From positions 62,001-126,000 of IMG/VR virus record IMGVR_UViG_3300047548_001122: DNA of 64,000 bases. One strand, 5' to 3'. Shown here piece after piece: positions 8,843 to 28,021 of this stretch. The notes under the pieces are model-generated. The model worked only from the letters and a program-made list of their open reading frames with translations. It had not been told where the DNA came from and ran no database searches. The translations under genes were made by a program, and so were the position numbers. Every line of letters begins with the position of its first letter. The stretch's first letter is position 1.

Positions 8843-9580
8843 ATGATTGGAATTATTGGTTATGGTATGGTTGGACAAGCCGTTGAATACGGCTTTTCCA
8901 AAACTAAAGTTTTTGTTTGTGATCCGAAATATAATCACGTAACAATTAAGGGTCTTTGTTTATTAAATCCAGAGGCCATATTTGTATGTGTGCCTACCCC
9001 TACAGACGATACAAATTATTCATTATTGACTTCAATATTGGACGAAATCGTATTGATGAATTATCAAGGCATTGTTATTGTAAAGTCTACAATATTGCCT
9101 CAATATTTGTCCAAATATGATATAGTGTATAATCCTGAATTTCTATCCAGATCAACTTCAAAAGAAGATTTCGTCAAACCTCCTTTTATATTACTGTCTG
9201 GAAAAAAATCTGAAAAAGTAACAGAACTCTATAAAAAATATTCTATTGTTGATACTAGTAAAATATTTACTACCGATATCAATACTGCATCTTTTATAAA
9301 GTATACCATGAATAGTTTTTATGCGACAAAAGTAACGTTCATGAATACCATGTATGATATTGCTAAAGAGTTAAACGTTGATTATAATGAAGCAATATCA
9401 ATTCTATCTCAACACCCCTGGATGGGTTCTCATCATTTTCAAGTACCTGGACCTGATGGTAAAAGAGGATTTGGAGGTCCTTGTTTACCGAAAGACACAA
9501 AGGTTTTAGCTGAAAAATTTGATAAAGAATTATTAAAGACTGTTTTAAAAATAAACGAACAATATAGAAATATTATATAG
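8843..9580 (+). CDS. UDP-glucose/GDP-mannose dehydrogenase-like protein (short form)
   Basis: GYGMVG Rossmann motif, FVCVPTP, KSTI, YNPEFL, catalytic GFGGPCLPKD. Only 245 aa, so the C-terminal domain is absent. Confidence 0.85.
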   Translation: MIGIIGYGMVGQAVEYGFSKTKVFVCDPKYNHVTIKGLCLLNPEAIFVCVPTPTDDTNYSLLTSILDEIVLMNYQGIVIVKSTILPQYLSKYDIVYNPEFLSRSTSKEDFVKPPFILLSGKKSEKVTELYKKYSIVDTSKIFTTDINTASFIKYTMNSFYATKVTFMNTMYDIAKELNVDYNEAISILSQHPWMGSHHFQVPGPDGKRGFGGPCLPKDTKVLAEKFDKELLKTVLKINEQYRNII

Positions 9581-9617
9581 TTGACTAAAACTATATACTA
9601 TAAAGAGGAGAAAAAAA

Positions 9618-10724
9618 ATGGTTGTAGACATTAACGTAACTAGTATCTGTAATTTGGCTTGTACGTATTGTTCAGAAGGATTTGAATGTGGATTGTCAAC
9701 AGAATTTGAAGAAAATACTTCTTTAACGTTGGATAATGTTGAAGAATTTATGGCAAAAATTTCCGATCCAAAGAAAGATGTTTATTTTTGGGGTGGTGAA
9801 CCTTTTGTTAATTGGGATTTTTGCAGGGGAGTTATAGAGAAATTTAAACACGACCCTGGTTTCTCATTCTTCTTCTATACGAATGGTACATACTTGAAAA
9901 GATATCTAAAAGATTTAGTTAGAATTCATAATGAAATACCAGGTAGATTAAAACTACAAGTTTCGTATGATGGAAAGCCAGTAAATGACATTGCTCGCGT
10001 AACCAAATCTGGTACGCCATCTTCAGCTTTAGTTAAAGCGAATTACATTGCAGCTAAAGAAGCCGGATTAAACATTTCGTTGAAATCAGTTTTAACTTCA
10101 GATAATTTTCATTTGATTTATGAAGCGTTTTTAGATGTAATTGAAATGGACAAAAATTATTTTCCTACACCAGACTTATACAGTCAGTTAACTGAGGAAG
10201 AATTTATGCCCAAGTTAGAGGTATTAAAAGAGGGATTGAAAAAGATAGCAAAACACATTTATGAAAATAAGTTACCACCTGAAAAATTTGGATGGTTTCA
10301 ACAGTCTAGAGCTCTCTGTGCCGCAGGTATTAATTATTTGAGTGTAGATTTGAATGGAGATTTAAGTCCTTGTCACGGGTGCATGTATAAAGAATCACAT
10401 TCACATAAATTAGGAAACATTTTTAAAGTTGCTGATTTGGATGCTTTAATTGAAGAAAAATCTACAATGTATAAAAATGCTTTAAAAAATCAACCATTGG
10501 ATTGTATGAATTGCGACAGTCAATTCTGTATGAAATGTAATGCTGCAACATATGAGAAAAGTGAGAAAGAAACTTATTTGGAAAAGTGGAGCGATCACAC
10601 CGCAAACTGGCAAGTATGTAAAGTTTTTAAAACAAACGAAATTGTGCATCACGCTTTAAGAACTGCTTTGAAGAGTTACAAAAAACCTGTAATTAAAATC
10701 CAAGCAGAACAATGCACAGTTTAA
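9618..10724 (+). CDS. Radical SAM/SPASM protein (peptide-maturase-like)
   Basis: CNLACTYC, FWGGEP, TNG; C-terminal CAAG...PCHGC...CMNCDSQFCMKC Cys cluster; SD GAGGAG upstream. Confidence 0.9.
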   Translation: MVVDINVTSICNLACTYCSEGFECGLSTEFEENTSLTLDNVEEFMAKISDPKKDVYFWGGEPFVNWDFCRGVIEKFKHDPGFSFFFYTNGTYLKRYLKDLVRIHNEIPGRLKLQVSYDGKPVNDIARVTKSGTPSSALVKANYIAAKEAGLNISLKSVLTSDNFHLIYEAFLDVIEMDKNYFPTPDLYSQLTEEEFMPKLEVLKEGLKKIAKHIYENKLPPEKFGWFQQSRALCAAGINYLSVDLNGDLSPCHGCMYKESHSHKLGNIFKVADLDALIEEKSTMYKNALKNQPLDCMNCDSQFCMKCNAATYEKSEKETYLEKWSDHTANWQVCKVFKTNEIVHHALRTALKSYKKPVIKIQAEQCTV

Positions 10725-10733
10725 GGAGAAAAA

Positions 10734-11858
10734 ATGTTTACATTGGAAGTTAGTGTTACGGAAAAATGTAATCTTGGTTGTCCATATTGTTATGTGGCAA
10801 ACAGACCAACATGGATGACAAAAGAAGTTTTCGATCAAGGTATGGAAGACCTCACGAAACTAATGCAAAAATCTGGCGATAAAGATTATCATGTTAGTTT
10901 TTTCGGGGGTGAACCTTTACTTAATTGGGAATTAATTACTCATGCAGTACCGTATTTAAAATCGGATAAAAGATGTAAGGGTATTAATATCATTACTAAC
11001 TTAACGATGATTGATGAAGAGAAGGCCAACTATTTGAAAGAAAATAGTGTTGGTGTTTCTTGGTCGTTTGATGGTATGAGTTCAAATGAAAGTAGACCAC
11101 TTTTACCTTTACTCGAAAATACTAACCCAGAAACCGGCGAATTGTTTGATGGCATTCTTTCAATGTATGAATATAAAAAGGATATCATAAAAGGTTTGAC
11201 AAATGGTTGCAAGGTTATGATATGGCCAGGCAATACAAAAGACATGAAAGAAAATTTTGAATTTTTGCTCGAATGGGGAATAGAACATCCAGATTTCAGT
11301 ATTGTTCGTGATGATGTTTGGACAGCAGATGACATAAGACAGTTTAGATATGAATGTGAAAGATTAGCAGACTTTTGGATAGAACAACTGAAAGCGGGAA
11401 AACCCTGTTCTGTTGGATTTCTTAGACTTGCAATCTTAGACACATTATACGGATTGGTAAAAGGTAAAAGACCATTCGGATGTTTTGCTGGAGCAAATGG
11501 TGGAGTTTTAATGAGTTCTGGTGAATTTTATCCTTGTGCTAGATTTGCATCTAAAAAGATCATGAAGATGGATGAACAATATAACTTTAAATATTATCAA
11601 GACATTTTTAATCCTAAGAATTTCGATAAGTGTGAACCGTGTGATTTGAAACAAGTTTGCAATGCTGGTTGCACTTATTCTCAAATCATGAATGATAACA
11701 AACCATTGGATAGTATTTGTGAATTATTTCACATCTATTATGAACAAGCTATAAGAGTTGTGAATGAATGTAGAGATATTCCAACATTTCAAGATTTAGT
11801 GCTGCATTTTATTGAAAGTGTTGGTGTGGAAAATGAAGGATTGGAATGTAGGAATTAA
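10734..11858 (+). CDS. Radical SAM/SPASM protein (AslB/peptide-maturase-like)
   Basis: CNLGCPYC, FFGGEPLL; SPASM CFAG...YPC...CEPCDLKQVCNAGC...C; SD AAGGAG. Confidence 0.92.
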   Translation: MFTLEVSVTEKCNLGCPYCYVANRPTWMTKEVFDQGMEDLTKLMQKSGDKDYHVSFFGGEPLLNWELITHAVPYLKSDKRCKGINIITNLTMIDEEKANYLKENSVGVSWSFDGMSSNESRPLLPLLENTNPETGELFDGILSMYEYKKDIIKGLTNGCKVMIWPGNTKDMKENFEFLLEWGIEHPDFSIVRDDVWTADDIRQFRYECERLADFWIEQLKAGKPCSVGFLRLAILDTLYGLVKGKRPFGCFAGANGGVLMSSGEFYPCARFASKKIMKMDEQYNFKYYQDIFNPKNFDKCEPCDLKQVCNAGCTYSQIMNDNKPLDSICELFHIYYEQAIRVVNECRDIPTFQDLVLHFIESVGVENEGLECRN

Positions 11859-11859
11859 T

Positions 11860-12189
11860 ATGAAAAAATTAAAAAGTTTATTGTCAATACCTATAAAGGT
11901 AGAAATGCAACCTGTTGAACATGCTTCAAATAGAGTTATAACGGTTGATGAACTATCAAATCAAATAGAAGAGGCTAGAAAAGGTAAAGCTAAAGTTGAT
12001 AGTAAGTATGTTGGATACAATGAAGCTGGCCATTTATTTGATTACAAATTTGATTATGTTAAATTTTTAGATAATATGAGTTTCATAATTAAAGAGGCTA
12101 AAAAAAGACCTAGAGATAACAGATATAAGAGTGAACATAAATTAATGTTGTCGAACGCCGGCAAAGGGCAAGATATACAAAAAGAATAA
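11860..12189 (+). CDS. Hypothetical protein (110 aa, basic) within radical SAM cluster
   Basis: ATG at 11860, one base after the upstream stop, is preferred to the overlapping 11812 start; its stop overlaps the next ATG. Confidence 0.6.
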   Translation: MKKLKSLLSIPIKVEMQPVEHASNRVITVDELSNQIEEARKGKAKVDSKYVGYNEAGHLFDYKFDYVKFLDNMSFIIKEAKKRPRDNRYKSEHKLMLSNAGKGQDIQKE

Positions 12190-13055
12190 TGGCTATAAAA
12201 GATTTTTTTGTTTTTCATGAATCCAATAAACCAATAATTACAAATTCTGGTGTTAATGTTTTATACTTCACAAATAAATGCAACTTAGCCTGCACTTATT
12301 GTTATGAGGATTTGCCTGGAAGACCCCCTCAAATTTTAAGTAAAGAGGATATTGTTCGTATTGTAGACGAAGTTATTTTGAGAGAGGATCCTGAAAAGCA
12401 AACACTATTTGTTTTATTTGGTGGTGAACCCACTCTAGAATGGGAAAATGTTTGTTTTGCTATGGAATATGCCTATAATAAAAAGAAAAACGTACACTTT
12501 AATATGACAACAAATGGTATAAAATACCTAAGTGAAAAATTTATAATTGAGACTAAAAATAACTTTTTCTACAAAAATAGAATGTTGTCTATAGATGTTA
12601 GTTTTGATGGCATCGGCAATAAAGACAGAATTTTCCATAATGGAAAAGAATCAACTTCTTCAATGTTGACTGTTTTTAAGAATTTGTTAGTAAATAACTT
12701 TAGATATAGACTCAGATATACTGTACATAAATATAATGTTAAATGGTGTTATGATGACATACACAAATTAATAAAGACGTTTAAACCTGAAAGATTGATA
12801 ACTTCAGTTGCATGGGACACTCTAGGTGAAGATGATTTAGTTAAGTTACAGGAAGTAAAAGACAAGTTTAGAGATGACTGGATAAATAGAAGAATAGACG
12901 TTCCAGTATGTGATATATTTTGTGACATGTGTAACGGATGCTCGGAGACAAAAGATATCAAAACCTATTTTACCAATGAAGGTAATGTAACAACTCATAA
13001 AAATTTTGAGAGTACGCCCAAATTTAAGGATTTTAAAGAAAAGGTAATGTTATGA
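12189..13055 (+). CDS. Radical SAM protein with short Cys-rich C-terminus
   Basis: CNLACTYC, LFGGEPTL, TTNG, SIDVSFDG; C-terminal CDIFCDMCNGC instead of a full SPASM domain. Confidence 0.88.
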   Translation: MAIKDFFVFHESNKPIITNSGVNVLYFTNKCNLACTYCYEDLPGRPPQILSKEDIVRIVDEVILREDPEKQTLFVLFGGEPTLEWENVCFAMEYAYNKKKNVHFNMTTNGIKYLSEKFIIETKNNFFYKNRMLSIDVSFDGIGNKDRIFHNGKESTSSMLTVFKNLLVNNFRYRLRYTVHKYNVKWCYDDIHKLIKTFKPERLITSVAWDTLGEDDLVKLQEVKDKFRDDWINRRIDVPVCDIFCDMCNGCSETKDIKTYFTNEGNVTTHKNFESTPKFKDFKEKVML

Positions 13056-13441
13056 ATAAAGATGAAATCGTAATTGAAAAATTGAAAAATATTGCTCAGA
13101 TTATCAATGATATCAAAGAGTATGACCAACCTCTTGCTGACTTAATTTGGATGGGTTTCGATACTTCTATGAGTTTAGCTAAATCCGTTTATGAAAATTC
13201 CGAGAAAGATGAACCTATTGATATTTCGGTTTATTTGGAACAAATGTGTGAAGTTCTAGGTATAAATCTGGAACAATTAATTTTAGATATAGTTCAGAAA
13301 AATAACACGAATGAAGTTGCTGAAAAAGAACCTGACACTGAAACTCTAGATTTCATAACTTCTGACATGGATGATTATGAAAAATTTTTGGCCAAAAATT
13401 CAGCGAAAAATAATCTAGATTTCTTATCTAAGGAAATATAA
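13052..13441 (+). CDS. Hypothetical acidic protein (129 aa)
   Basis: ATGA overlap with the upstream gene; Asp/Glu-rich; no recognised motif. Confidence 0.6.
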   Translation: MNKDEIVIEKLKNIAQIINDIKEYDQPLADLIWMGFDTSMSLAKSVYENSEKDEPIDISVYLEQMCEVLGINLEQLILDIVQKNNTNEVAEKEPDTETLDFITSDMDDYEKFLAKNSAKNNLDFLSKEI

Positions 13442-13445
13442 AAAA

Positions 13446-14045
13446 ATGGCTAGTTTAGGACAATTCTTTAATACCGATTCGCCGGTGTATGGCCAGACAA
13501 AACCGGCTGGTGTTCACAGAAAAATATCGAAAACATTTCAAGGAACTTTTGCAACTAATGCCGTTTCTTACGGTCTTTCTGAAGTAAATACCAGTACTAC
13601 TATATCATCATCGTTTTTCAATTCTTTAATTACTAATGCAAAATCTGAAAGAGTTAGAAGGGGAAAGGCAGATGCTAATATAAGTGCCGTTTCATCAGGC
13701 ACAGCTATATCAGCTACCACTCTTAATGATATTAGAAATGCATATAATGTTACAGATGATAGGGTAAATCAAGCGTGGGACGATTGGAGTGGAGCTAATG
13801 CTAATTCTCCAACCGAAACAGCTTTACCAACAAAAACAGTTTGGGGTCCTACAGCAGCTCCATCTAATGTTCCAGGAAGCGTATCTTCAGGTACAAAAAT
13901 TACCGCGAGTGTTATCAATAGTTTAGTGAATTCTTTAAATGCAGCAGGAGCAGTTTGTACCTGTAATTGTAATTACTGTACCTGTAACTGTAACTATTGC
14001 ACTTGTAACTGTAATTATTCCTGTACGTGTAATTGTAATTATTAA
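13446..14045 (+). CDS. Protein with C-terminal Cys-rich (CTCNCNY)x4 repeat; candidate radical SAM substrate or metal-binding protein
   Basis: 199 aa, Ser/Thr/Ala/Asn-rich body with no Cys until the last 29 residues, which hold 12 Cys; SD AAGGA upstream. Confidence 0.8.
   Translation: MASLGQFFNTDSPVYGQTKPAGVHRKISKTFQGTFATNAVSYGLSEVNTSTTISSSFFNSLITNAKSERVRRGKADANISAVSSGTAISATTLNDIRNAYNVTDDRVNQAWDDWSGANANSPTETALPTKTVWGPTAAPSNVPGSVSSGTKITASVINSLVNSLNAAGAVCTCNCNYCTCNCNYCTCNCNYSCTCNCNY
13956..14042 (+). repeat. Coding tandem repeat: 4 x 21-bp unit encoding CTCNCNY (one Ser inserted before unit 4)
   Basis: tgtacctgtaattgtaattac / tgtacctgtaactgtaactat / tgcacttgtaactgtaattat / tcc / tgtacgtgtaattgtaattat. 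Units differ only at synonymous positions. Confidence 0.95.
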
Positions 14046-14047
14046 AA

Positions 14048-14518
14048 ATGTTATTTGATTTAAATCACTTGGAAGAAACTGAAATGTCTTACATTAGACA
14101 CTTCAACCATGGTATGATATTAGGTATGTGGTTGTTTTTTTGTTTTTGCGCTTCTCTTGTTTATTGTTTTTTTCCAATTAAATTCTTACAAGATTTTATA
14201 AGTGAAAGAATAAAAACAATGTATCATGGATTAATGTTGAGATGGTTCGAAGATGATAATTTTAATCCACTCAAACCAAAAAAAGATGCAATAAGAGAAA
14301 AAGTCTATAAAAAAGAATATATTGAAAATATACAAAAAGGATTAGTTAAACCATTTGGTAATTTCAGAACATCTTATGAACTGTTAGTTACTTCTTTAGC
14401 GAGTGTAATACATTCTACTATACCTCAGATATTAGTTCATGTTGCAGCTATGAATGTGGTAAGGTTGTATTTTAGTATTAAAATTGTGGAGAAATCATAT
14501 GAAGCAAAACAAAGTTGA
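14048..14518 (+). CDS. Hypothetical membrane-associated protein (possibly DUF6356-like)
   Basis: HLEETEMSYIRHF...hydrophobic segment...FFP, plus a second similar segment ending IHSTIP. Family call is from memory of the motif only. Confidence 0.5.
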   Translation: MLFDLNHLEETEMSYIRHFNHGMILGMWLFFCFCASLVYCFFPIKFLQDFISERIKTMYHGLMLRWFEDDNFNPLKPKKDAIREKVYKKEYIENIQKGLVKPFGNFRTSYELLVTSLASVIHSTIPQILVHVAAMNVVRLYFSIKIVEKSYEAKQS

Positions 14519-14903
14519 AATTGAAGGTGTAGATGCAAACACTTACGCAGGAAAAGCTATTCAAGCGTGTAAGTTAAAAGCTAGAGGTATATTTGGAGAC
14601 GAACTTTTAACATTTAAATTGTTGGATTTTGTGAGTTTTTTCTTATTAAATAATGAATTGTCATCCAAAGGATATACTATTACGGAAAATAACAGAGAAG
14701 AAGTTTATATTAAAATTATAGAAACTGGCGACATTCAATTGATTAATGATTTGGAAAAATACATTTCTCTTAGAGATTCTTTAAAAGAATTGGAAAAAAA
14801 GAAAGAAGAATATTATAATATTGTGGAAAAGTTGTCTAGTTTACAAGATTTCAATGATGAAGTCAGTATAAATGAAATAGTAGAGTCGTATTTAAGGAGA
14901 TAA
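14499..14903 (+). CDS. Hypothetical helical protein (134 aa)
   Basis: In-frame ATG at 14499 preceded by GGAG is preferred to 14484; charged helical C-terminus. Confidence 0.6.
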   Translation: MKQNKVEIEGVDANTYAGKAIQACKLKARGIFGDELLTFKLLDFVSFFLLNNELSSKGYTITENNREEVYIKIIETGDIQLINDLEKYISLRDSLKELEKKKEEYYNIVEKLSSLQDFNDEVSINEIVESYLRR

Positions 14904-21943: not shown

Positions 21944-22560
21944 AATGCGCTATAACAGGACATACTAGAGGATTAGGCAAATCTCTCTATAATCACTTTA
22001 AAGAAAAAGGATGGGAAGTAATTGGATTTAGTACAACCAATGGATATTTTTTACCTGATGCTTTAGAAAAAGTAATTGAAGAGTCGAATGGTTGCGATTT
22101 GTTCATCAACAATACATTTGCACAGGGACATCAAATCGATCTGTTACATGCTTTGAAATATAAGGTTAAAAATATGGTTGTTTGTGGATCGATTGCTAGA
22201 ACTGAACCATTAAACGAAATACTGTATGGTGATTATGTAGACATTAAAACCGAGTTAGCAAAGTCTTGTAATATTTTAAGTATCAGTAATGACAGTAGAT
22301 TAATGAATATATTACATTTGGATTTGGGATTTTTAGAAGGTAGTGTTGAAAACATTTTAGATCCTACAGAATTTATAAGTGATTATACAATAGGTTTTAA
22401 TGATGTAATCTCCGCAATTGAATTATGGTTGTTGCATCCTAAGATTAAACAAATTGAATTTTCCTGGAAATTAACTCCTTTTTTGGAAACTAGACTTAAA
22501 CGAGCCACAAATAATCCAGATTCATTAAATAAACTTTTATCTGACATAAATGAAGCGTGA
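21940..22560 (+). CDS. Short-chain dehydrogenase/reductase-like protein
   Basis: AITGHTRGLG (TGxxxGxG), DLFINN, YxxxK (YVDIK). Confidence 0.7.
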   Translation: MKCAITGHTRGLGKSLYNHFKEKGWEVIGFSTTNGYFLPDALEKVIEESNGCDLFINNTFAQGHQIDLLHALKYKVKNMVVCGSIARTEPLNEILYGDYVDIKTELAKSCNILSISNDSRLMNILHLDLGFLEGSVENILDPTEFISDYTIGFNDVISAIELWLLHPKIKQIEFSWKLTPFLETRLKRATNNPDSLNKLLSDINEA

Positions 22561-23278
22561 ACTTTTAAAATATTCCTACGAAAATCAACTATCGCATATT
22601 CCTAGTGCGTTAAGTATGATTGATTATGTTGAAGTTTTATTTACAAGTAAACATGTAACTAAGGATGATTATATTATTATAGGAAAACCTTTTGGTTCCC
22701 AAGCTTATTATTTGATTTGGCGAAGATTAGGATATTTAAATAATATTGAAAAATTGAGTGTTGGTGTTAAACATGAAGAAATAGACTTTGTTGATTTTAG
22801 TGAAGAAACTATGGGAAATGCACTTGGTGTTTCTATAGGAGTAGCAATTTCCAATCCAGAAAAACGTGTTTGGGTGAATATAAGTGATGCTTCATTACAG
22901 ATGGGAAATACTTTAGAAGCAATACAGTTTATCGGACATAATAAAATAAAAAACATCTTTTTGACAATTGATTATAATAATGCTCAAGTTACCGGTAAAA
23001 CACAAGATGTATTGAGTGTATCTCCAGTAGTAAATATGTTTGAAAATTATGGATGGAATCTACAGATTGTGGACGGACATGAACACAGTGTTATAAAAAA
23101 ATCTTTAGATAATTTGTCTAAATTTTTACCAAATGTTATAGTGTTCCAAACCAAAAAAGGCAAATCTATTCAAAGTATGGAAAATGATGTTAAAAAGTGG
23201 CATTATAAAAAAATTGAAACGTCAGAAGAATTAGACTTTTTATTAGAAGAAATTTATCATGAGACAACAACTACATAA
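22550..23278 (+). CDS. Transketolase N-terminal (ThDP-binding) subunit, divergent
   Basis: SHIPSALS, MGNALGVSIGVA, SDASLQMG...DYNN, VDGH, TKKGK, WHY. Confidence 0.8.
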   Translation: MKRELLKYSYENQLSHIPSALSMIDYVEVLFTSKHVTKDDYIIIGKPFGSQAYYLIWRRLGYLNNIEKLSVGVKHEEIDFVDFSEETMGNALGVSIGVAISNPEKRVWVNISDASLQMGNTLEAIQFIGHNKIKNIFLTIDYNNAQVTGKTQDVLSVSPVVNMFENYGWNLQIVDGHEHSVIKKSLDNLSKFLPNVIVFQTKKGKSIQSMENDVKKWHYKKIETSEELDFLLEEIYHETTTT

Positions 23279-23735
23279 ATTCTTAAATCGTTATCCTGGT
23301 GAAGTTTATTTTTTACACTGTGATATGTGGAAATGGTTAGACTCGAACTATAAACAAATAAATTGTGGCGTACAAGAACCAAACATGGTTAACATTGCAG
23401 CAGGTTTGGCCAGCCAAGGTAAAAAAGTGATTATATACGGTGTAGCTGGATTTGTGATTTATAAAAGTTATGAACAAATAAAACTTAACATAAAAGGTTG
23501 GGCAGAAAAATACGGAAGTATAATTTTTGTAAATGCGGGTGCTAATGGAGCCTATAAAATATGTGGCAGGGGACATTTGTTAGATGATGATGAACAACTA
23601 ATGAATTCTCTCGGTATTGATTTTTATGATCCAATTGACACTTCAACCTTTATAAGAAATGTTAAAGATGGACTAAAAAGTCCTGGTGTAAGATATCTTA
23701 GACTTGGTTGGGACAACGAAGTATGGAAAAAATAG
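23259..23735 (+). CDS. Transketolase pyrimidine-binding-domain subunit (short)
   Basis: NCGVQEPNMVNIAAGLASQG, SYEQIK, GH, PGVRYLRLG; only 158 aa. Confidence 0.8.
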   Translation: MRQQLHKFLNRYPGEVYFLHCDMWKWLDSNYKQINCGVQEPNMVNIAAGLASQGKKVIIYGVAGFVIYKSYEQIKLNIKGWAEKYGSIIFVNAGANGAYKICGRGHLLDDDEQLMNSLGIDFYDPIDTSTFIRNVKDGLKSPGVRYLRLGWDNEVWKK

Positions 23736-24325
23736 TTGTTACTGGATCAACAGGATTCATAGGAAGTAATCTTTGCCTACAGTTGGAAAAAAGAGGTTTT
23801 GATGTAATAAGAATGAATCGTAGTTTTTTTCCAATTGAGTCTTGTTATAGAATTTACCATTTAGCTTGTCCATCCACAACAAAGAGAATAAACGATAATC
23901 CAACAGAAATAATGGATATAATTTTTGACAGAACTAGGCAAGCATTAGATATTTGCCGTTCTTCTTTGTTTATAAATGCCTCGACCTATGGTGTGAATTT
24001 CATTGACGAATCTAAACAATCGTGTTATAATATAGCCAAACTTTCGATGGAATACTATCTAAAATATAGTGGAATAAAGTATCTTAATTATAGATTACCT
24101 TCAGTTTATGGTGAAGGTATGCATGATGATAACTTCATAAAAAGATGTATTGACAATACCGCATATAAACCAAAAAATCCTGAACAAAAATATTTTATTT
24201 CACATATTGATGATGTGATAGAATCTCTTATAAATTTAACAGAACTTAAAATTGAAGAGACAACTTTAGGATCGATATATAAAGATTTTGGTTCAGGAAA
24301 AAGAGGATTAAAAAAATATGTCTAA
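23723..24325 (+). CDS. NAD-dependent epimerase/dehydratase (short)
   Basis: VVTGSTGFIG, YHLA, YNIAK (YxxxK), VYG; ATG at 23723 preferred. Confidence 0.8.
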   Translation: MEKIVVTGSTGFIGSNLCLQLEKRGFDVIRMNRSFFPIESCYRIYHLACPSTTKRINDNPTEIMDIIFDRTRQALDICRSSLFINASTYGVNFIDESKQSCYNIAKLSMEYYLKYSGIKYLNYRLPSVYGEGMHDDNFIKRCIDNTAYKPKNPEQKYFISHIDDVIESLINLTELKIEETTLGSIYKDFGSGKRGLKKYV

Positions 24326-25583
24326 TATAGAAAACATTGTTGTTATTGGTGCAGGAACTACAGGATATTTGACAGTCTTTCATTTATGTGAAACTTATCC
24401 GAATAAAAAAATTACTTGGATTTATCCCGAAGAAAATCAACCTATAGGTGTTGGAGAAGCTATAATACCAGATGTTAGTAAGTTTTTGAATAATTTTGGA
24501 ATAACACATAAAGACATTTTAAAGAATTGTAACGGCACATTAAAATTTGGCATTTATTTAAAAGGTTGGAATACGCCAGGCGAAGATTTTACTTTTCCTT
24601 TTGGATACGAATCGGTTAATATCAAACATAATTCGGCAAGTCAAGATCGAATTATGAAAACTCATAAGATACCGAAAGGTATATTTGAATATCAAAACAT
24701 ATCGACACATTTTAGAGCTACAGAATTGTTGATGTACATGGATAAAGTAAAAGAAAAATATTTAAATTTGAAAGTCGTTAGGAAAGAAGTAACATTAAAT
24801 GAGATTAAAGATAGTTATGATTTAGTTATAGACTGTACTGGATTTGAAAGAAAAATAAGTTATCTACCAGATAATTTTAAAAACATTAACGATAAGATAC
24901 CAAACAATCAAGTTTTTCTTTTTAGGCATAATTATACCGATAGAGAAAAACAGTGTGTTCCTTATACGGTTGCTGAAGCAATGAATTATGGATGGTGTTT
25001 TAATATACCTTTGAGAAATGAACTGGCGTGTGGTTATGTACACGATAATAAATTTGATGTTACAGATGAATATATTCAGTATTTGGAAAAAAAGTTTAAC
25101 ATAAAAGTTCAACCAGAGCAATTGAAAAAATTAAAGATGATAACTGGTAGAAACAAAGTACACTTAAAAGATAATGTTGTTGCTATGGGACTTTCATCCT
25201 GTTTCATAGAACCCTTAGAATCTACTGGTTTATATTTGGTAACTAGTTCTTTGAGAAAGCTCTGCGACTACATTGATGAAAAAATTACTGAAAATGAATA
25301 TAACTTTTTTATTAATGAAGAATTTGATACAATTACCGATTTTATAGTCGAACATTATAAGTTTTCCAAGAGGAGTAACGATTATTGGAATTTTTACAAA
25401 AGCGTAAAAACTAAAAAACGTACAATTAATATTTTTCCCAATTCTGGTTGGGATACTATAAGAAGTGGTTTTTTACCTGAAGTTAAAAGACCTACAGAAT
25501 CTTTGGATGGAAAAGAATTGATAGAAATACATAGAGGCAAACCTTTTCATGAATGGATATTGGAGGAAGAAAATTATATATGA
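24318..25583 (+). CDS. Flavin-dependent halogenase, tryptophan-halogenase (PrnA-like) family
   Basis: GAGTTG, IGVGEA, TLKFGI (catalytic Lys region), DCTGF, WCFNIPL, FIEPLESTG. Confidence 0.85.
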   Translation: MSNIENIVVIGAGTTGYLTVFHLCETYPNKKITWIYPEENQPIGVGEAIIPDVSKFLNNFGITHKDILKNCNGTLKFGIYLKGWNTPGEDFTFPFGYESVNIKHNSASQDRIMKTHKIPKGIFEYQNISTHFRATELLMYMDKVKEKYLNLKVVRKEVTLNEIKDSYDLVIDCTGFERKISYLPDNFKNINDKIPNNQVFLFRHNYTDREKQCVPYTVAEAMNYGWCFNIPLRNELACGYVHDNKFDVTDEYIQYLEKKFNIKVQPEQLKKLKMITGRNKVHLKDNVVAMGLSSCFIEPLESTGLYLVTSSLRKLCDYIDEKITENEYNFFINEEFDTITDFIVEHYKFSKRSNDYWNFYKSVKTKKRTINIFPNSGWDTIRSGFLPEVKRPTESLDGKELIEIHRGKPFHEWILEEENYI

Positions 25584-26503
25584 ATAATTTAATTTTAGGT
25601 GGTGCTGGGTTTATAGGTCAACATTTAACTCATAAATTATTGAAAACTCGCCAACAGAGAGTAACAATTATTGATAATCTTTCCACCAGTAAAATAAATC
25701 TTGATGAATTTTCCGAATATAAAAATCTTTTTAGTTTTATACATGCCGATATTCAAAGTTTGGAGGATAAACAGTTACTTAAATTGATGAGGGATAATAA
25801 TAGAGTTTTTCATTTTGCTGGTAGTGTTGGAGTGGAACACATCGACAAAAATCCAAAAGAAACACTATTCAATAATGTTTCCCTTACAAATAAACTTTTA
25901 CCTCTTTTTAGAGAATCTAAAAGACATGTGATTTTTTCTAGTACAAGTGAGGTTTATGGAAATGGACCATTTAATGAGGAAGATTCTTGTAACATTGGTC
26001 CTAGCAATAAATTAAGATGGGGTTATGCTGCCAGTAAATTGATGACAGAATTTTTGTTGAATGCTAGTGAAATGCCTTCAACTATATTTCGTTTTTTTAA
26101 CATTGTTGGTCCAGGACAATTATCCGACTATGGTATGGTTTTACCAAGATTTGTGGAGTCTGCAAAACGAAATGAGGATTTAATTGTTTATGGAACAGGA
26201 GAACAAATACGCTGTTTTTTTCATATTGATGATGCGACAGATGCTATAATCAAATGCAGTGGTTTTAAAAATGAACTATTCAATATTGGTAATGACAATC
26301 CTGTTACGATAAACGAACTTGCAAAAAAAGTAATAGAAATTAGCGGTTCTAACAGTAAAATTATTCACGTTCCTTATGAAAAAGCATTCAGTAATAATCA
26401 TCAAGACATTCAAACCAGAATTCCTGATATTACTAAACTTAGAGAAAAAACAGGGTTTAAACCTAAACACGATTTAGAAAAAATAATAATGGATATGTTA
26501 TGA
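25580..26503 (+). CDS. NAD-dependent nucleotide-sugar epimerase/dehydratase or decarboxylase
   Basis: LGGAGFIG, FSSTSEVYG, YAASK, RFFNIVGP, GTGEQIRCFFHIDD, PDITK; ATG at 25580 preferred. Confidence 0.9.
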   Translation: MNNLILGGAGFIGQHLTHKLLKTRQQRVTIIDNLSTSKINLDEFSEYKNLFSFIHADIQSLEDKQLLKLMRDNNRVFHFAGSVGVEHIDKNPKETLFNNVSLTNKLLPLFRESKRHVIFSSTSEVYGNGPFNEEDSCNIGPSNKLRWGYAASKLMTEFLLNASEMPSTIFRFFNIVGPGQLSDYGMVLPRFVESAKRNEDLIVYGTGEQIRCFFHIDDATDAIIKCSGFKNELFNIGNDNPVTINELAKKVIEISGSNSKIIHVPYEKAFSNNHQDIQTRIPDITKLREKTGFKPKHDLEKIIMDML

Positions 26504-27144
26504 AAATAGTTTTCATATTTGCTCACTTAGATGATGAATCCTTTGGACCAGCCGGAACAATATCTAAGATGTGTGAAGAGAACGAAGTTACGATAGTTTC
26601 TTTATGTAGAGGCAATCGACCAGGAAACGAACATGTAGAGTCGAAAAGGTTGAATGCCTTTCATAAAGCATGCTCTTATTTTGGTGCCAAACCATTATTT
26701 TTTGAAAATTCCGACTGTAAATTAGATTTGGAAAAATGTTTAGTTGATGTAGAATCTGTAATCCGTGATATTCAACCAGAAGTGGTTTTTACTAATAACA
26801 TATCAGATATTCATCGAGATCATAGAATAGTGTCTGAATCTGTTATGGTGGCTTGTAGACCTAAACCAGATTCAACTGTAAATCAGTTATATATGTGTGA
26901 GATACCGGCTTCTACCGAATGGTCTATGGGTCAAATAGAACCAATTTTCACACCCAACTATTTTGTCGATGTTTCAAAATATATGAATGAGAAGAAACAT
27001 GTATTATCTTTTTATGATACGGAAATATATTCATACCCAGATGCAAGATCAGAGAAAAGTATGGTAGTATTGTCCGAGTATAGGGGTAAACAAGTAGGAT
27101 TTAACAATGCTGAGGCTTTTAAACTGGTATACTCCCGTCAATAG
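26500..27144 (+). CDS. PIG-L/LmbE family deacetylase
   Basis: FAHLDDESFG (HxDD), HRDH, PNYFVDVS, AEAF. Confidence 0.9.
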   Translation: MKIVFIFAHLDDESFGPAGTISKMCEENEVTIVSLCRGNRPGNEHVESKRLNAFHKACSYFGAKPLFFENSDCKLDLEKCLVDVESVIRDIQPEVVFTNNISDIHRDHRIVSESVMVACRPKPDSTVNQLYMCEIPASTEWSMGQIEPIFTPNYFVDVSKYMNEKKHVLSFYDTEIYSYPDARSEKSMVVLSEYRGKQVGFNNAEAFKLVYSRQ

Positions 27145-27673
27145 ATATTCTTTCTTTTCCATAAAATTCTTTTATTCCATAAGTTTTTAATATTGATTTG
27201 TATAACCCATCCAAGTCATCATTATAGGGAAAACAAAACTTTTCTGGAAAATAATTTAAATTCTTTTGAAACCACTCTAACATTAATTCTGTATCCTTTT
27301 TTATGTGATTTACCTTTTCATTTAAACTAGAAAAATAATTTAGATTTTTATGAAAATGTGAGTGACCTCCAATAAAAACATTTTCCTGTTGAGATAAATA
27401 CTTTATCTGTTCTAAATTCATAAAATCTTCATTATTTCCTTTAAACGATTTTTCATGGCACTCTTTAGAACTTATGAAGTTTTTGGATTGTTTACCGTTG
27501 CCAATAATATTAGTTGAAATAAAAAAGATTTTTTCTGTTGGTATATTTTTTATTTTTGGATAATAATAAAAATGGTTGTAAAGTCCGTCATCGAAGGTTA
27601 AAATATAATTTTTTAGGTTTAATTGGAGATGATTATCTTCAAATGTGTGTATCATCAAAACTGACTTTTTCAT
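27119..27673 (-). CDS. Polysaccharide deacetylase (NodB-like)
   Basis: LMIH, LTFDDG, GGHSHFH, FCFPY. Start set at the ATG of MKKSV (27673) because the longer start overlaps the divergent + strand gene. Confidence 0.8.
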   Translation of the reverse strand: MKKSVLMIHTFEDNHLQLNLKNYILTFDDGLYNHFYYYPKIKNIPTEKIFFISTNIIGNGKQSKNFISSKECHEKSFKGNNEDFMNLEQIKYLSQQENVFIGGHSHFHKNLNYFSSLNEKVNHIKKDTELMLEWFQKNLNYFPEKFCFPYNDDLDGLYKSILKTYGIKEFYGKERISIDGSIPV

Positions 27674-27678
27674 ACAAA

Positions 27679-27685
27679 ATAAATA
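27679..27685 (+). promoter_or_regulatory. T4-type late promoter-like motif ATAAATA before erpA
   Basis: Lies in the 33-bp divergent intergenic gap, upstream of SD AGGAG. Confidence 0.4.
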
Positions 27686-27706
27686 TATTAGATAGGAGAT
27701 TTTAAG

Positions 27707-28021
27707 ATGTTTAATGTAACAGAAGCTGCAATACAAGAAATCAAACAGTATTTAGATGAAGAGAACAAGTATTTAAGAGTTTATGTTGAGGGTGGAGGTT
27801 GTTCAGGATTTAGATATGGTTTTGATTTTGAAGAGAGTTTATCGGAAGATGATTTTGAGATCCCGTTAGATGGTTTTTCCATTGTTGTCGATTCTTTTAG
27901 TATGCAATATTTGGACACGGCCACTTTAAATTTTAAAGAGGATATTATGGGTCATACTTTTACCATAGAAAATCCAAATGCTCAGACTACATGTGGCTGC
28001 GGAAGTAGTTTTTCGGTATAA
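27707..28021 (+). CDS. erpA: A-type iron-sulfur cluster carrier (ErpA/IscA/HesB family)
   Basis: LRVYVEGGGCSGFRYGF, NPNAQTTCGCGSSF; SD AGGAG. Confidence 0.92.
   Translation: MFNVTEAAIQEIKQYLDEENKYLRVYVEGGGCSGFRYGFDFEESLSEDDFEIPLDGFSIVVDSFSMQYLDTATLNFKEDIMGHTFTIENPNAQTTCGCGSSFSV

What the first reader, a model, noticed from the sequence alone, without database searches (positions are those of the whole stretch)
8843..28021. ~19 kb enzyme island wedged between tail-fibre genes
Seen: 27 closely packed ORFs, many with overlapping start/stop codons and nearly all recognisable ones being modifying enzymes. They are flanked on both sides by fibre genes, with no DNA replication or nucleotide-metabolism genes. 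Inference: the island decorates virion proteins or the host surface (glycosylation, Fe-S chemistry, halogenation) rather than DNA. Known: some large phages, e.g. the Campylobacter CP220/CPt10 type, carry many radical SAM genes, so abundance alone is not new. The combination and position are what stand out.
Basis: partly seen in the sequence, partly recalled or inferred. Interest (0 to 1): 0.65.

Follow-up and report, generated by a model that had tools for sequence, protein, structure and literature searches.

The report
Radical-SAM cassette maturing a phage fibre
The 19-kb enzyme island is real and is a conserved phage cassette: three peptide-maturase-type radical SAM enzymes and a set of sugar, halogen and Fe-S enzymes surround a small fibre-type protein with an invariant cysteine-repeat tip, so it most likely makes a chemically cross-linked and decorated virion fibre, which has not been described for any virus.

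Summary
Window 8843-28021 carries 26 tightly packed ORFs (15 of 23 same-strand junctions overlap). It holds all 7 radical SAM genes of a 214-kb T4-like freshwater myovirus and lies between fibre-like genes. The genome has no DNA-modification hallmark genes.

ORF 13446-14045 ends in four cysteine heptads (CTCNCNY). Its orthologues continue into a Peptidase_S74 intramolecular-chaperone domain, the mark of trimeric phage fibres and spikes, so the heptads are the mature C-terminal tip. The block is invariant across lineages despite saturated synonymous change.

Just upstream lie three radical SAM enzymes. Two have full SPASM domains, and the closest solved relative is the thioether maturase CteB. 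The link runs both ways. 28 of 33 heptad loci with enough flank carry radical SAM genes. 16 of 18 viral loci with a close (>=50% identical) enzyme B homologue carry a heptad ORF, against 0 of 53 with distant ones. Campylobacter phage CP220 has the same pair.

The whole cassette recurs in phages of 200-364 kb, and not always beside fibre genes.

Best reading (inferred, untested): RiPP-like cross-linking of a fibre tip, followed by tailoring. This is a new variant of a known chemistry. Expression timing is unresolved.

The parts
8426..8839 (+). C-terminal ~135-aa domain of the 1107-aa fibre-like protein (gene 5516-8839). This domain travels with the module in distant phages.
   Evidence: tblastn matches to residues 971-1106 at 37-45% identity lie directly upstream of the radical SAM/heptad module in L037, L040, L049, L050, L054, L058, L062, L064, L067, L082, L087 and L091. 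phrog_22593 matches residues 977-1083.
8843..9580 (+). Truncated UDP-glucose/GDP-mannose dehydrogenase-like protein (245 aa). It has part of the NAD domain and the central domain but no UDP-binding C-terminal domain. It is the conserved head of the cassette.
   Evidence: Pfam PF00984 at 65 bits and PF03721 at 35 bits. TIGR03026 covers only positions 78-297 of 413. A ~250-aa form sits at the same position in L172 and L174 and in G001-G003 and G005; in G004 the homologue lies elsewhere in the locus.
9618..10724 (+). Radical SAM/SPASM enzyme A.
   Evidence: Pfam Radical_SAM, Fer4_12 and SPASM. PapB-like, 77 bits. CxxxCxxC at C11/15/18 plus 7 invariant C-terminal Cys in 11 of 11 homologues. 96-98% identical in close relatives.
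10734..11858 (+). Radical SAM/SPASM enzyme B, closest to thioether (ranthipeptide/SCIFF) maturases. It lacks an N-terminal RRE domain.
   Evidence: NCBIfam PapB 133.5 bits and SCIFF maturase 82 bits, both below the equivalog cut-offs. Best PDB relative is CteB 5WGG, E 1.4e-15, query 7-328 aligned to CteB 102-430. Invariant C12/16/19 and SPASM Cys C250, C268, C300, C303, C309, C313, C329.
11812..12189 (+). Small basic protein (conserved core ~90-100 aa), part of the core module. The real start is probably downstream of 11812.
   Evidence: No family match. Conserved in 5 lineages (A3) and present in distant cassettes. The JGI gene call starts at window 11833.
12189..13055 (+). Radical SAM enzyme C, with one auxiliary Cys cluster motif (twitch-like).
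   Evidence: Pfam Radical_SAM at 50 bits. PapB-like, 81 bits. Invariant C31/35/38 and C241, C248, C251. Kept as a separate orthologue next to A and B in distant phages.
13052..13441 (+). Acidic 129-aa protein (net charge -17), part of the core module.
   Evidence: No family match. Conserved, with an invariant DDYEKF motif (A4). Net charge.
13446..14045 (+). Heptad fibre protein (199 aa), the proposed substrate. It has a variable N-terminal part and an invariant C-terminal cysteine-heptad tip.
   Evidence: Translation. Orthologues L001, L008 and L013 continue into Pfam Peptidase_S74 above the cut-off (alignment A6). phrog_26958 matches residues 149-199. 630 related, unnamed protein clusters exist.
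13956..14042 (+). Cysteine-heptad block: CTCNCNY x3, Ser, CTCNCNY. The ORF ends exactly where orthologues have the S74 self-cleavage site.
   Evidence: It is the only such motif in the genome. It is invariant in 5 lineages. Window versus G002 differ at 18 of 87 nt and 0 of 29 aa.
14048..14518 (+). DUF6356 membrane protein. It is lineage-specific (window and G005 only) and sits where other lineages have the S74 domain.
   Evidence: Pfam DUF6356 at 43 bits. Two hydrophobic segments. Absent in G001-G004.
14484..14903 (+). All-helical 139-aa protein, the most widely co-occurring partner of the heptad protein.
   Evidence: AlphaFold model with pLDDT 86.8, showing long helices. No fold match. Homologues sit next to heptad ORFs in distant contigs. 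phrog_25260.
14906..15892 (+). Fast-evolving 328-aa protein with a sulfotransferase-like lead.
   Evidence: ESM Atlas feature hits at 0.94-0.96 to sulfotransferase-named clusters, which is a lead only. 23-45% identity among lineages. An APS-kinase-like gene lies just upstream of the cassette in L172.
15899..16777 (+). 292-aa protein of unknown family (phrog_24441) with a weak GT-B glycosyltransferase-like lead.
   Evidence: phrog_24441, E 1e-21. Atlas score of 0.90 to Glycos_transf_1 / T4 glucosyltransferase clusters, a lead only. No PDB sequence match.
16758..17750 (+). Radical SAM enzyme D (HxsC/NirJ/SkfB-like).
   Evidence: Pfam at 67 bits. NCBIfam HxsC at 77 bits. PDB SkfB, E 9e-12. Invariant extra Cys C232, C296, C299, C305.
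17744..18415 (+). Family-2 glycosyltransferase (223 aa).
   Evidence: Pfam PF00535 at 42 bits. Conserved at the same position in L172 and L173.
18405..19316 (+). Radical SAM enzyme E.
   Evidence: Pfam at 38 bits. 90-92% identical in close relatives. Invariant extra Cys C237, C254, C281, C286, C288.
19300..20058 (+). Radical SAM enzyme F.
   Evidence: Pfam at 52 bits. Invariant extra Cys C216, C234, C244, C249.
20065..20880 (+). U32-like beta/alpha-barrel protein with four invariant Cys, possibly an Fe-S enzyme.
   Evidence: Weak Pfam Peptidase_U32 match, E 0.0018. Invariant C38, C176, C180, C207 (A2). The model is poor (pLDDT 58.5). The best structural match is U32 peptidase Mk0906 (5D88), Z 9.9, 155 residues aligned.
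20873..21943 (+). Radical SAM enzyme G.
   Evidence: Pfam at 43 bits. Invariant extra Cys C283, C301, C341, C346.
21940..22560 (+). SDR-like 206-aa protein, specific to this genome.
   Evidence: Only weak NCBIfam SDR matches. No homologue in G001-G005.
22550..23735 (+). Split transketolase-like enzyme in two ORFs: thiamine-diphosphate-binding half 22550-23278 and pyrimidine-binding half 23259-23735.
   Evidence: Pfam Transketolase_N and TPP_enzyme_C, with a weak Transket_pyr match. NCBIfam transketolase at 85 bits. Conserved in all lineages.
23708..24325 (+). Short NAD-dependent epimerase/dehydratase-family protein (205 aa).
   Evidence: Pfam Epimerase at 59 bits.
24318..25583 (+). Compact flavin-dependent halogenase (421 aa), without the C-terminal tryptophan-binding part of free-Trp halogenases.
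   Evidence: Pfam Trp_halogenase at 220 bits. PDB matches to PyrH, Thal, RebH and VirX1 at E 1e-33 to 1e-41, with alignment ending about 100 residues before their C-termini. The GxGxxG and LESTG motifs are kept, and WxWxIP reads WCFNIP. Absent in G002, two copies in G005.
25553..26503 (+). SDR of the nucleotide-sugar 4,6-dehydratase/epimerase type (316 aa).
   Evidence: Pfam Epimerase at 132 bits, GDP_Man_Dehyd at 120 bits and Polysacc_synt_2 at 60 bits.
26500..27144 (+). PIG-L/LmbE-family de-N-acetylase.
   Evidence: Pfam PIG-L at 64.5 bits.
27119..27736 (-). Polysaccharide-deacetylase-family protein, the only minus-strand gene in the island.
   Evidence: Pfam Polysacc_deac_1 at 23.3 bits, right at the cut-off. 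Found in G001, G002, G003 and G005 (no match in G004) and near the module in L087.
27707..28021 (+). IscA-type Fe-S cluster carrier, preceded by a late-promoter-like ATAAATA at 27679-27685.
   Evidence: Pfam Fe-S_biosyn at 72 bits. The motif lies 28 nt before the start codon. ATAAATA is the most enriched 7-mer upstream of genes in this genome.

Best explanation
The island is one conserved biosynthetic cassette. Its core matures a dedicated fibre-type protein.

Shown:
- ORF 13446-14045 is a small protein of the phage fibre/spike type. Its orthologues end in a Peptidase_S74 intramolecular chaperone.
- Its mature C-terminal tip is an invariant block of four CTCNCNY heptads.
- Three distinct radical SAM enzymes (A, B and C) always accompany it. 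A and B have full SPASM domains. B is most like the thioether maturase CteB but has no RRE domain. Small proteins 11812, 13052 and 14484 travel with them.

Inferred:
- In the infected cell, A, B and C use SAM-derived radicals and their auxiliary Fe-S clusters to cross-link the heptad cysteines to neighbouring residues. The most likely products are thioethers to the Thr, Asn or Asp next to each Cys, which are the acceptor types known from ranthipeptides. This would turn the tip into a rigid, protease-proof and redox-proof knot.
- The small proteins may present or chaperone the substrate, replacing the missing RRE.
- The remaining ~12 kb is a tailoring set acting on the same product or on another virion protein. 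It holds four more radical SAM enzymes, GT2, a possible GT-B enzyme, a possible sulfotransferase, a U32-like Fe-S protein, a split transketolase, SDRs, PIG-L, a deacetylase and a compact halogenase. It would build an unusual amino-sugar from host UDP-sugars, attach it and de-acetylate it, and possibly halogenate the heptad tyrosines.
- The IscA-like protein helps load the roughly 16-19 [4Fe-4S] clusters that these enzymes need.
- The finished protein would sit on the virion as a fibre tip or whisker involved in adsorption or stability.
For: Heptad tip and S74 domain.

Selection: the block is invariant at all 29 residues although up to 22 of 87 nt differ between lineages. This includes the non-Cys positions.

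Enzyme type:
- PapB/SCIFF/CXXX-repeat maturase models are the top NCBIfam hits for A, B and C.
- CteB is the best PDB relative of B.
- The SPASM cysteines are invariant.

Co-occurrence, forward: the DNA pattern for two heptads finds 50 viral stretches. Of 33 loci (50 viral plus 5 from genome collections) with at least 5 kb of flank, 28 have a radical SAM ORF. Homologues of A, B, C and 14484 are present even at 24-44% identity.

Co-occurrence, reverse: with a profile of B, a heptad ORF lies within 8 kb in 9 of 10 loci (>=70% identity), 7 of 8 (50-69%), 3 of 8 (33-49%) and 0 of 53 (<33%).

Campylobacter phage CP220: a heptad protein (gp140) lies 2.2 kb from the PapB-like radical SAM gp136, in a tail/baseplate neighbourhood.

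Whole cassette: its gene order is conserved in G001-G005 and in contigs of 332 and 364 kb.

Soluble enzymes, no export machinery.

No DNA-modification hallmarks.

Precedent: a SPASM enzyme (CrpC) installs ranthionine cross-links on a Cys-rich protein (PMC13692751).
Against: - No chemistry was observed. Thioether formation rests only on similarity to maturases, and every NCBIfam score is far below the equivalog cut-offs (133 versus 340 bits).
- The enzymes lack an RRE, and no partner was shown to replace it.
- Virion incorporation of the heptad protein is not shown anywhere. The window's own copy lacks the S74 domain.
- Five of 33 heptad loci show no radical SAM gene in the DNA held. L041 has about 5 kb on both sides.
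- Some phages (G009, G010) have only the core, so the tailoring half may serve another target.
- The sulfotransferase and GT-B assignments are leads only.
- No canonical late-promoter motif lies in front of 8843 or 9618, and no RNA data exist, so late co-expression is assumed.
Confidence: 0.55

Rival explanations
1. The heptad block is a metal- or Fe-S-binding needle of a trimeric fibre, comparable to the His-x-His iron sites of the T4 gp37 tip, and is not covalently modified. The radical SAM, sugar and halogenase enzymes make a separate product (a glycan or small molecule) and are linked to the fibre gene only by co-regulation.
For: - Cys at every second position fits one face of a beta-strand.
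- An IscA-like gene lies in the island.
- The chemistry is untested.
- The T4 gp37 comparison is from general knowledge, not a tool result.
Against: - The association is specific and reciprocal, and it holds for CteB/PapB-type maturases but not for other phage radical SAM enzymes.
- The Thr, Asn and Tyr positions are invariant too, not only Cys.
- Minimal modules in G009 and G010 consist only of the three radical SAM enzymes, the heptad protein and the helical protein, with no sugar genes for the enzymes to serve.
Confidence: 0.15
2. The heptad protein is a precursor of a released RiPP-like product (a toxin, signal or anti-competitor peptide/protein), not a virion part. The cassette would be a phage-borne natural-product cluster.
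For: - The logic is RiPP-like: a Cys-rich core, SPASM enzymes, and halogenase and glycosyltransferase tailoring.
- In L173 the cassette is not next to structural genes.
- 2-4 tandem heptad paralogues occur in some contigs, as with multi-precursor RiPP clusters.
Against: - The S74 intramolecular chaperone is characteristic of trimeric fibres and spikes.
- No peptidase or exporter was matched in the cassette, and only one lineage-specific membrane ORF is present.
- A conserved fibre C-terminal domain is encoded directly upstream of the module in many phages.
- In CP220 the heptad gene lies among tail genes.
Confidence: 0.12
3. The island is an auxiliary metabolic or host-surface cluster. It remodels host LPS, capsule or cell wall during infection (superinfection exclusion or release), as proposed for LPS genes in cyanophages.
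For: The sugar-type enzymes (GT2, SDRs, UDPGDH-like, PIG-L, polysaccharide deacetylase, transketolase) resemble polysaccharide loci.
Against: - No flippase, polymerase, lipid-carrier transferase or ABC exporter family was matched.
- All enzymes are predicted soluble.
- No sugar-1-phosphate nucleotidyltransferase family was matched.
- The sugar genes keep a fixed order with the heptad/radical SAM core in distant phages.
Confidence: 0.1
4. The enzymes hypermodify phage DNA, as with 7-deazaguanines in CP220-type phages or sugar-type base modifications.
For: - The closest cultured phages with homologous radical SAM and halogenase genes are Campylobacter Firehammerviruses. These are reported to carry modified guanine (general knowledge; one related paper surfaced but was not read).
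- Enzyme E has a weak QueE-like hit, E 4e-9, 36 bits against a cut-off of 260.
Against: - The genome has no TGT/DpdA and no ThyA-type hydroxymethylase.
- The island has no nucleotide-binding transferases or kinases.
- The homologues in CP220 and CP21 are not in queuosine-type gene neighbourhoods.
Confidence: 0.03

Closest known systems
Ranthipeptide/SCIFF maturation (CteB-CteA, PapB-PapA) and protein-level ranthionine formation (CrpC-CrpA, PMC13692751)
   Same: - Radical SAM enzymes with a SPASM domain are encoded next to a Cys-rich repeat substrate.
- The residues beside the cysteines (Thr, Asn, Asp) are the acceptor types known for these enzymes.
- CteB is the best solved relative of enzyme B.
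   Different: - The system is viral.
- The substrate is a 140-540-aa fibre-type protein with an S74 chaperone, not a short leader-core peptide.
- The enzymes lack the RRE domain.
- Three non-redundant enzymes are always present.
- Scores are far below the family cut-offs.
- The product is unknown.
Phage fibres and spikes with a C-terminal intramolecular chaperone (Peptidase_S74: K1F endosialidase, T5 L-shaped tail fibre)
   Same: Orthologues of the heptad protein carry the S74 domain above the Pfam cut-off, directly after the heptads. The conserved Ser-Asp-x-Arg-Leu-Lys junction is present.
   Different: - The window's copy and G005 end exactly at the junction and lack the chaperone.
- No known S74 fibre has a cysteine-heptad tip or dedicated radical SAM enzymes.
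Radical-SAM-rich Campylobacter phages (CP220/CPt10/CP21, Firehammervirus; PMC2853527)
   Same: They carry homologues of enzyme A (28-30% identity) and of the halogenase (32%). CP220 gp140 has the same heptad repeat, 2.2 kb from the PapB-like gp136.
   Different: - There the genes are scattered and do not form one 19-kb operon.
- The repeat was annotated only as a 21-bp DNA repeat.
- The 2010 paper proposed host metabolic benefit at low oxygen.
Virus-encoded glycosylation of virion proteins (chlorovirus and mimivirus fibrils, mycobacteriophage capsids) - from general knowledge
   Same: Virus-encoded sugar-modifying enzymes and glycosyltransferases are presumed to act on structural proteins in the cytoplasm.
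   Different: Here glycosylation is only inferred. The dominant chemistry is radical SAM, and a dedicated repeat substrate is encoded inside the cluster.
Viral flavin-dependent halogenase VirX1 (PDB 6QGM) and RiPP halogenases
   Same: Same Pfam family. VirX1 matches at E 1e-33.
   Different: The window's enzyme is ~100 residues shorter at the C-terminus. Its substrate is unknown, and it is absent from one lineage (G002) and duplicated in another (G005).

Membership tests
Radical SAM superfamily | CxxxCxxC cluster motif near the N-terminus and a Pfam PF04055 score above the gathering cut-off | tested here: met
   Seven ORFs score 37.6-67.2 bits against a cut-off of 29.5. The motif is present and invariant in all seven.
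SPASM-domain radical SAM peptide maturases (CteB/PapB type) | C-terminal 7-Cys SPASM motif for two auxiliary [4Fe-4S] clusters | tested here: met
   Enzyme B: C250, C268, C300, C303, C309, C313, C329 are invariant. Enzyme A: seven invariant Cys with slightly different spacing. Enzyme C has only 3-4, which is twitch-like.
SPASM-domain radical SAM peptide maturases (CteB/PapB type) | N-terminal RiPP recognition element (RRE/PqqD-like) that binds the leader | tested here: not met
   The radical SAM motif starts at residues 11-12 (A, B) or 31 (C). The alignment to CteB starts at CteB residue 102, after its RRE.
SPASM-domain radical SAM peptide maturases (CteB/PapB type) | Score above the curated equivalog cut-off of a named maturase family | tested here: not met
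   The best score is PapB at 133.5 bits against a cut-off of 340. SCIFF scores 81.7 against 425. The enzymes work like, but are not members of, any named equivalog.
SPASM-domain radical SAM peptide maturases (CteB/PapB type) | Cys-rich substrate encoded next to the enzyme | tested here: met
   The heptad ORF lies within 0.4-3 kb. The co-occurrence is reciprocal.
SPASM-domain radical SAM peptide maturases (CteB/PapB type) | Thioether (sactionine/ranthionine) product | not testable with these tools
   This needs mass spectrometry or NMR of the co-expressed substrate.
Peptidase_S74 intramolecular-chaperone fibres | C-terminal PF13884 domain above the cut-off, preceded by the conserved Ser cleavage junction | tested here: inconclusive
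   Met in orthologues L001 (29.6 bits), L008 (24.2) and L013 (28.1) against a cut-off of 22, and in about a third of the listed homologues. Not met in the window's own ORF, which stops at the junction.
RiPP precursor peptides | Short precursor (usually under 110 aa) with a leader and a core released by a peptidase | tested here: not met
   The proteins are 140-540 aa. No leader peptidase was matched in the cassette.
Flavin-dependent (tryptophan-type) halogenases | PF04820 above the cut-off, GxGxxG FAD motif, conserved Lys region, and WxWxIP | tested here: inconclusive
   220.6 bits against a cut-off of 21. GAGTTG and the aligned Lys are present. WxWxIP reads WCFNIP. The C-terminal substrate module of Trp halogenases is missing.
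Phage DNA hypermodification clusters (7-deazaguanine, 5-hydroxymethylpyrimidine-based) | DpdA/TGT-type transglycosylase or ThyA-type hydroxymethylase in the genome | tested here: not met
   PF01702 and PF00303 gave no match in the complete 214-kb genome, while the control genomes matched.
Surface polysaccharide (O-antigen/capsule) loci | Membrane machinery: initiating lipid-carrier transferase, flippase or ABC exporter, polymerase | tested here: not met
   No such Pfam family was matched. Only the DUF6356 ORF has hydrophobic segments.
Peptidase U32 / UbiU-UbiV-type Fe-S proteins (for ORF 20065-20880) | U32 barrel fold and conserved Cys ligands, with PF01136 above the cut-off | tested here: inconclusive
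   Pfam scores 18.1 bits against a cut-off of 22.4. Four Cys are invariant. The best structural match is 5D88 at Z 9.9, but the model pLDDT is only 58.5.

The most novel reading that the evidence does not exclude
Phages from several unrelated lineages build a dedicated fibre whose tip is a RiPP-like knot. The lineages include freshwater and marine T4-like and jumbo phages, Campylobacter Firehammerviruses and gut Clostridia phages. In this reading, an invariant cysteine-heptad repeat is multiply cross-linked by three radical SAM enzymes and, in the larger cassettes, further glycosylated, halogenated or sulfated. It would be the first virion structural protein matured by radical SAM chemistry. 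It would also explain the long-puzzling abundance of radical SAM genes in CP220-type phages.
Probability: 0.4. Interest if true: 0.9.

Novelty: new variant of a known kind. Interest (0 to 1): 0.8.

Why it matters
- Radical SAM/SPASM cross-linking is known for small bacterial peptides and, very recently, for one archaeal protein. A virus using it on its own fibre would add a new class of virion post-translational modification. It would also be a new way to make a receptor-binding or stabilising tip that resists proteases and redox stress.
- It gives a concrete, testable function to the many unexplained radical SAM genes of CP220-type Campylobacter phages, which are culturable and used for biocontrol.
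- It gives a function to a family of at least 630 unnamed protein clusters in aquatic metagenomes.
- The cassette is a compact source of seven uncharacterised radical SAM enzymes, a minimal halogenase and sugar-tailoring enzymes with a defined candidate substrate.

Tried and rejected
- Nucleotide similarity: megablast of the island against 50,697 phage records found nothing.
- T4 late promoter: TATAAATA is not enriched (2 found, 12.9 expected). The sigma-70 and terminator scans were at chance level.
- Synteny with Campylobacter phages: the homologues are scattered there, so there is none.
- PDB sequence searches with profiles of ORFs 15899 and 20065 gave nothing usable.
- Foldseek on the 14484 model found no match, so the idea that it is an RRE-like domain is not supported.
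- Complex prediction of enzyme B with the heptad tail returned 'no answer' (score 0.02, mark 0.32). It counts neither for nor against binding.
- The idea that ORF 28069-28401 supplies the missing S74 chaperone in trans found no similarity.
- The idea that the heptad protein's N-terminal part is related to the neighbouring 1107-aa fibre found no similarity.
- Literature searches for the motif, for radical SAM with tail fibres, for ranthipeptides in phages and for Firehammervirus receptor-binding proteins found no description of this module.
- Considered and rejected: DNA modification, a strain-variable insert and a self-contained surface-polysaccharide locus.

Full report
1. WHAT IS THERE

The window is bases 62001-126000 of a complete, 214,237-bp IMG/VR virus record with direct terminal repeats. 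The tail sheath (60966-62672) is 53-55% identical to those of Pelagibacter phages Mosig and HTVC008M and Methylophilales phage Melnitz. The first gene is VrlC-like. The phage is therefore a T4-like myovirus, and it comes from freshwater metagenomes.

Region 8843-28021 holds 26 ORFs, 25 on the + strand. Fifteen of 23 same-strand junctions overlap. G+C is 0.27-0.32 in the island and 0.33-0.39 in the flanks.

Pfam and NCBIfam find:
- seven radical SAM proteins;
- a GT2 glycosyltransferase;
- a truncated UDP-glucose-dehydrogenase-like protein;
- a split transketolase;
- several SDR-type proteins;
- a flavin-dependent halogenase;
- a PIG-L de-N-acetylase and a polysaccharide deacetylase;
- an IscA-like Fe-S carrier.

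All seven radical SAM matches of the whole genome lie in the island. Both flanks are large fibre-like proteins.

2. IT IS NOT A VARIABLE INSERT

A search with enzyme B found 15 related viral loci. After extending five of them, the island proved syntenic from the UDPGDH-like gene to the IscA-like gene in five lineages, G001-G005 (G002 and G004 are complete genomes of 202-206 kb). Protein identities run from 98% down to about 25%.

The enzymes are better conserved than the neighbouring fibres. Enzyme A is 96-98% identical in close relatives, whereas the 1107-aa fibre is 57-70%.

Local differences exist:
- the DUF6356 ORF occurs only in the window and G005;
- the SDR-like ORF 21940 occurs only in the window;
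- G005 has a 2OG-Fe(II) oxygenase and a second halogenase;
- G002 has no halogenase.

Cultured relatives such as HTVC008M lack the island.

The same gene order recurs in contigs of 364 kb and 332 kb. In the 332-kb contig, the genes upstream are a lysozyme, an HNH nuclease and an endonuclease, not fibres. The cassette defines the feature, not its position.

3. THE OVERLOOKED SUBSTRATE

ORF 13446-14045 (199 aa) ends in Val, three CTCNCNY heptads, Ser, and a fourth CTCNCNY heptad, then the stop codon. It is the only such motif in the genome.

In five lineages the N-terminal part is only 36-54% identical, yet the heptad block is invariant. Window and G002 differ at 18 of 87 nucleotides in the block and at none of 29 residues. 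Every position, including Thr, Asn and Tyr, is therefore under strong purifying selection.

In G001, G002 and G004 the ORF continues with a Pfam Peptidase_S74 domain above the cut-off. This is the self-cleaving intramolecular chaperone of endosialidase tailspikes and the T5 L-shaped fibre. The window's ORF and G005 stop exactly at the cleavage junction. In all lineages the mature product would thus be a fibre-type protein whose C-terminal tip is the heptad block.

4. LINK TO THE RADICAL SAM ENZYMES

The three enzymes upstream (A 9618, B 10734, C 12189) have peptide maturases as their top NCBIfam hits: PapB, SCIFF, CXXX-repeat and Cys-every-fifth. All scores are far below the equivalog cut-offs.

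B's best solved relative is CteB (5WGG, E 1.4e-15). The alignment starts after CteB's RRE domain. A and B have seven invariant SPASM cysteines and C has three or four.

Forward test. A DNA pattern for two heptads hits 50 viral stretches. It hits only five in one genome each of 185,579 prokaryote species, and those look like phage contigs or prophages. The ORFs have 2-28 heptads, are often followed by the S74 junction, and sometimes occur as 2-4 tandem paralogues. Of 33 loci with at least 5 kb of flank, 28 contain a radical SAM ORF. Distant phages G006-G010 (B 41-44% identical, 37-41% by tblastn) keep the order fibre C-terminal domain, B, C, A, heptad ORF(s), 14484-like.

Reverse test. In 79 viral loci found with a profile of B, a heptad ORF lies within 8 kb as follows:

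| Identity to B | Loci with a heptad ORF |
|---|---|
| >=70% | 9 of 10 |
| 50-69% | 7 of 8 |
| 33-49% | 3 of 8 |
| <33% | 0 of 53 |

Campylobacter phage CP220 has a 534-aa heptad protein (gp140). Its repeat was annotated only as a 21-bp DNA repeat. It lies 2.2 kb from the PapB-like radical SAM gp136, among tail and baseplate genes.

The heptad protein family has 630 related clusters in the 5.8-billion-protein collection. Nearly all of those listed are unnamed or called 'hypothetical protein', and about a third carry S74.

5. THE REST OF THE CASSETTE

Four more radical SAM enzymes (D-G) each have 4-5 invariant extra cysteines.

ORF 20065 has four invariant Cys. Its best structural match is a U32 barrel (Z 9.9), but the model is poor.

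ORF 14906 has a sulfotransferase-like lead, and L172 carries an APS-kinase-like gene next to the cassette. ORF 15899 has a weak GT-B lead.

The halogenase keeps its FAD and catalytic motifs but lacks the C-terminal Trp-binding part of free-tryptophan halogenases.

Only the lineage-specific DUF6356 ORF has membrane segments. No flippase, polymerase, lipid-carrier transferase or nucleotidyltransferase family was matched. The sugar enzymes therefore appear to work in the cytoplasm on host nucleotide sugars.

G008 keeps homologues of much of the tailoring half next to the core (SDR 25553, PIG-L, 15899, enzyme D, GT2, enzyme E and the U32-like ORF). G009 and G010 have only the core.

6. MECHANISM

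Shown:
- the fibre-type nature of the heptad protein family;
- the invariance of the tip;
- the maturase-type nature of enzymes A-C;
- the reciprocal genomic linkage;
- cassette conservation;
- the absence of DNA-modification hallmarks.

Inferred:
- A, B and C cross-link the heptad cysteines, most likely as thioethers to adjacent Thr, Asn or Asp. These acceptor types are known from ranthipeptide chemistry.
- Protein-sized substrates have a precedent in CrpC/CrpA (PMC13692751).
- The small proteins substitute for the missing RRE.
- The tailoring half glycosylates, de-acetylates, halogenates or sulfates the same product.
- IscA supports cluster loading.

Expression timing is open. ATAAATA is the most enriched upstream 7-mer in the genome (10 found, 0.6 expected) and is depleted overall in the window (15 found, 46 expected). 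It lies 26-28 nt before the starts of 27707, 33077, 54908 and 62699, but not before 8843 or 9618. No RNA runs were found.

7. COMPARISON AND NOVELTY

The cassette works like a ranthipeptide/SCIFF system, but it fails two membership features: it has no RRE, and its scores are below the family cut-offs. Its substrate is a fibre protein rather than a short precursor. It also shares the S74 fibre architecture.

Timms et al. 2010 (PMC2853527) noted the unusual number of radical SAM genes in CP220/CPt10 and suggested a metabolic benefit. I found no paper that links them to a repeat protein.

I rate this a new variant of a known kind of chemistry in a new biological setting.

8. LIMITS

Everything about the product is inference. 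Virion incorporation is untested. Five heptad loci lack a visible radical SAM gene in the DNA held. Several assignments are leads only. The complex prediction gave no answer and is not used as evidence.

Noticed in passing
L030:6143-7747 (Campylobacter phage CP220, APL47_gp140): The 534-aa 'hypothetical protein' holds seven CTC[DN]CNY heptads followed by further CxC motifs. The record annotates this only as the 21-bp DNA 'Repetitive region x.1-6'. The PapB-like radical SAM gp136 lies 2.2 kb downstream.
   Followed up: partly
window 41135-48889: A 2584-aa fibre-like protein has Laminin_G_3 (concanavalin-like lectin) domains, an SMP-30/gluconolactonase-type beta-propeller, and weak arylesterase and strictosidine-synthase repeat matches. 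This is an unusual enzyme-like or lectin-like giant fibre.
   Followed up: no
window 33405-40799: A 2464-aa fibre-like protein has a DUF4183 domain at residues 2212-2272 and several PHROG tail-fibre matches. Small ORFs of 108 aa (33077-33403 and 40812-41138) precede each giant fibre gene and may be chaperones.
   Followed up: no
window, whole (+ strand): 27679, 33050, 51999, 54882, 60915, 62672: ATAAATA is the most enriched 7-mer upstream of genes in the genome (10 found, 0.6 expected) and is depleted in the window overall (15 found, 46 expected). It lies 26-51 nt before several structural gene starts. This is a likely late-promoter core, shorter than T4's TATAAATA, which is itself depleted (2 found, 12.9 expected).
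   Followed up: partly
window 9581-9617 and 28022-28068: The two largest same-strand intergenic gaps, at the edges of the island, share the motif TTGACTAAA(A/T)AC about 25-30 nt before a strong Shine-Dalgarno sequence. This may be a second promoter type.
   Followed up: no
L010:12665-12880 (contig IMGVR_UViG_3300008107_005910, G003): In this relative the heptad gene is cut down to a 71-aa N-terminal fragment without the heptads. Sister contigs (L011, L012) keep a 247-aa gene with them. This is either a natural loss-of-substrate variant or an assembly variant.
   Followed up: partly
L045:4685-7300, L055:2947-5015, L091:18526-19695: Some phages carry 2-4 tandem paralogues of the heptad protein, with different N-terminal parts and the same tip. 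This resembles exchangeable fibre heads sharing one matured tip.
   Followed up: no
L172:4835-5452 (364-kb ENA contig): An APS-kinase-like gene (weak Pfam match) lies directly upstream of the cassette. It fits the sulfotransferase lead for the ORF 14906 family.
   Followed up: no
L021:4160-4771 and L021:7615-8958 (G005): The closest relative's island is about 4.4 kb longer. It adds a 2OG-Fe(II) oxygenase, three unknown ORFs and a second halogenase (42% identical to the first). The tailoring set is the variable part of the cassette.
   Followed up: partly
G000:C1:24793-25158 (outside the window): A second GT2 glycosyltransferase gene lies elsewhere in the genome, about 46 kb upstream of the island.
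   Followed up: no
L092 (Pelagibacter phage HTVC008M 56808-65157): This cultured relative intersperses its structural module with oxygen-dependent tailoring enzymes: four 2OG-Fe(II)/phytanoyl-CoA dioxygenases and a ferrochelatase-like gene. A dioxygenase-halogenase pair sits between the small and large terminase genes. This may be an aerobic counterpart of enzyme genes placed among virion genes.
   Followed up: no
window 5267-5506: A 79-aa coiled-coil ORF lies between the VrlC-like gene and the 1107-aa fibre. It is conserved at 76-81% in close relatives and has only weak coiled-coil family matches.
   Followed up: no
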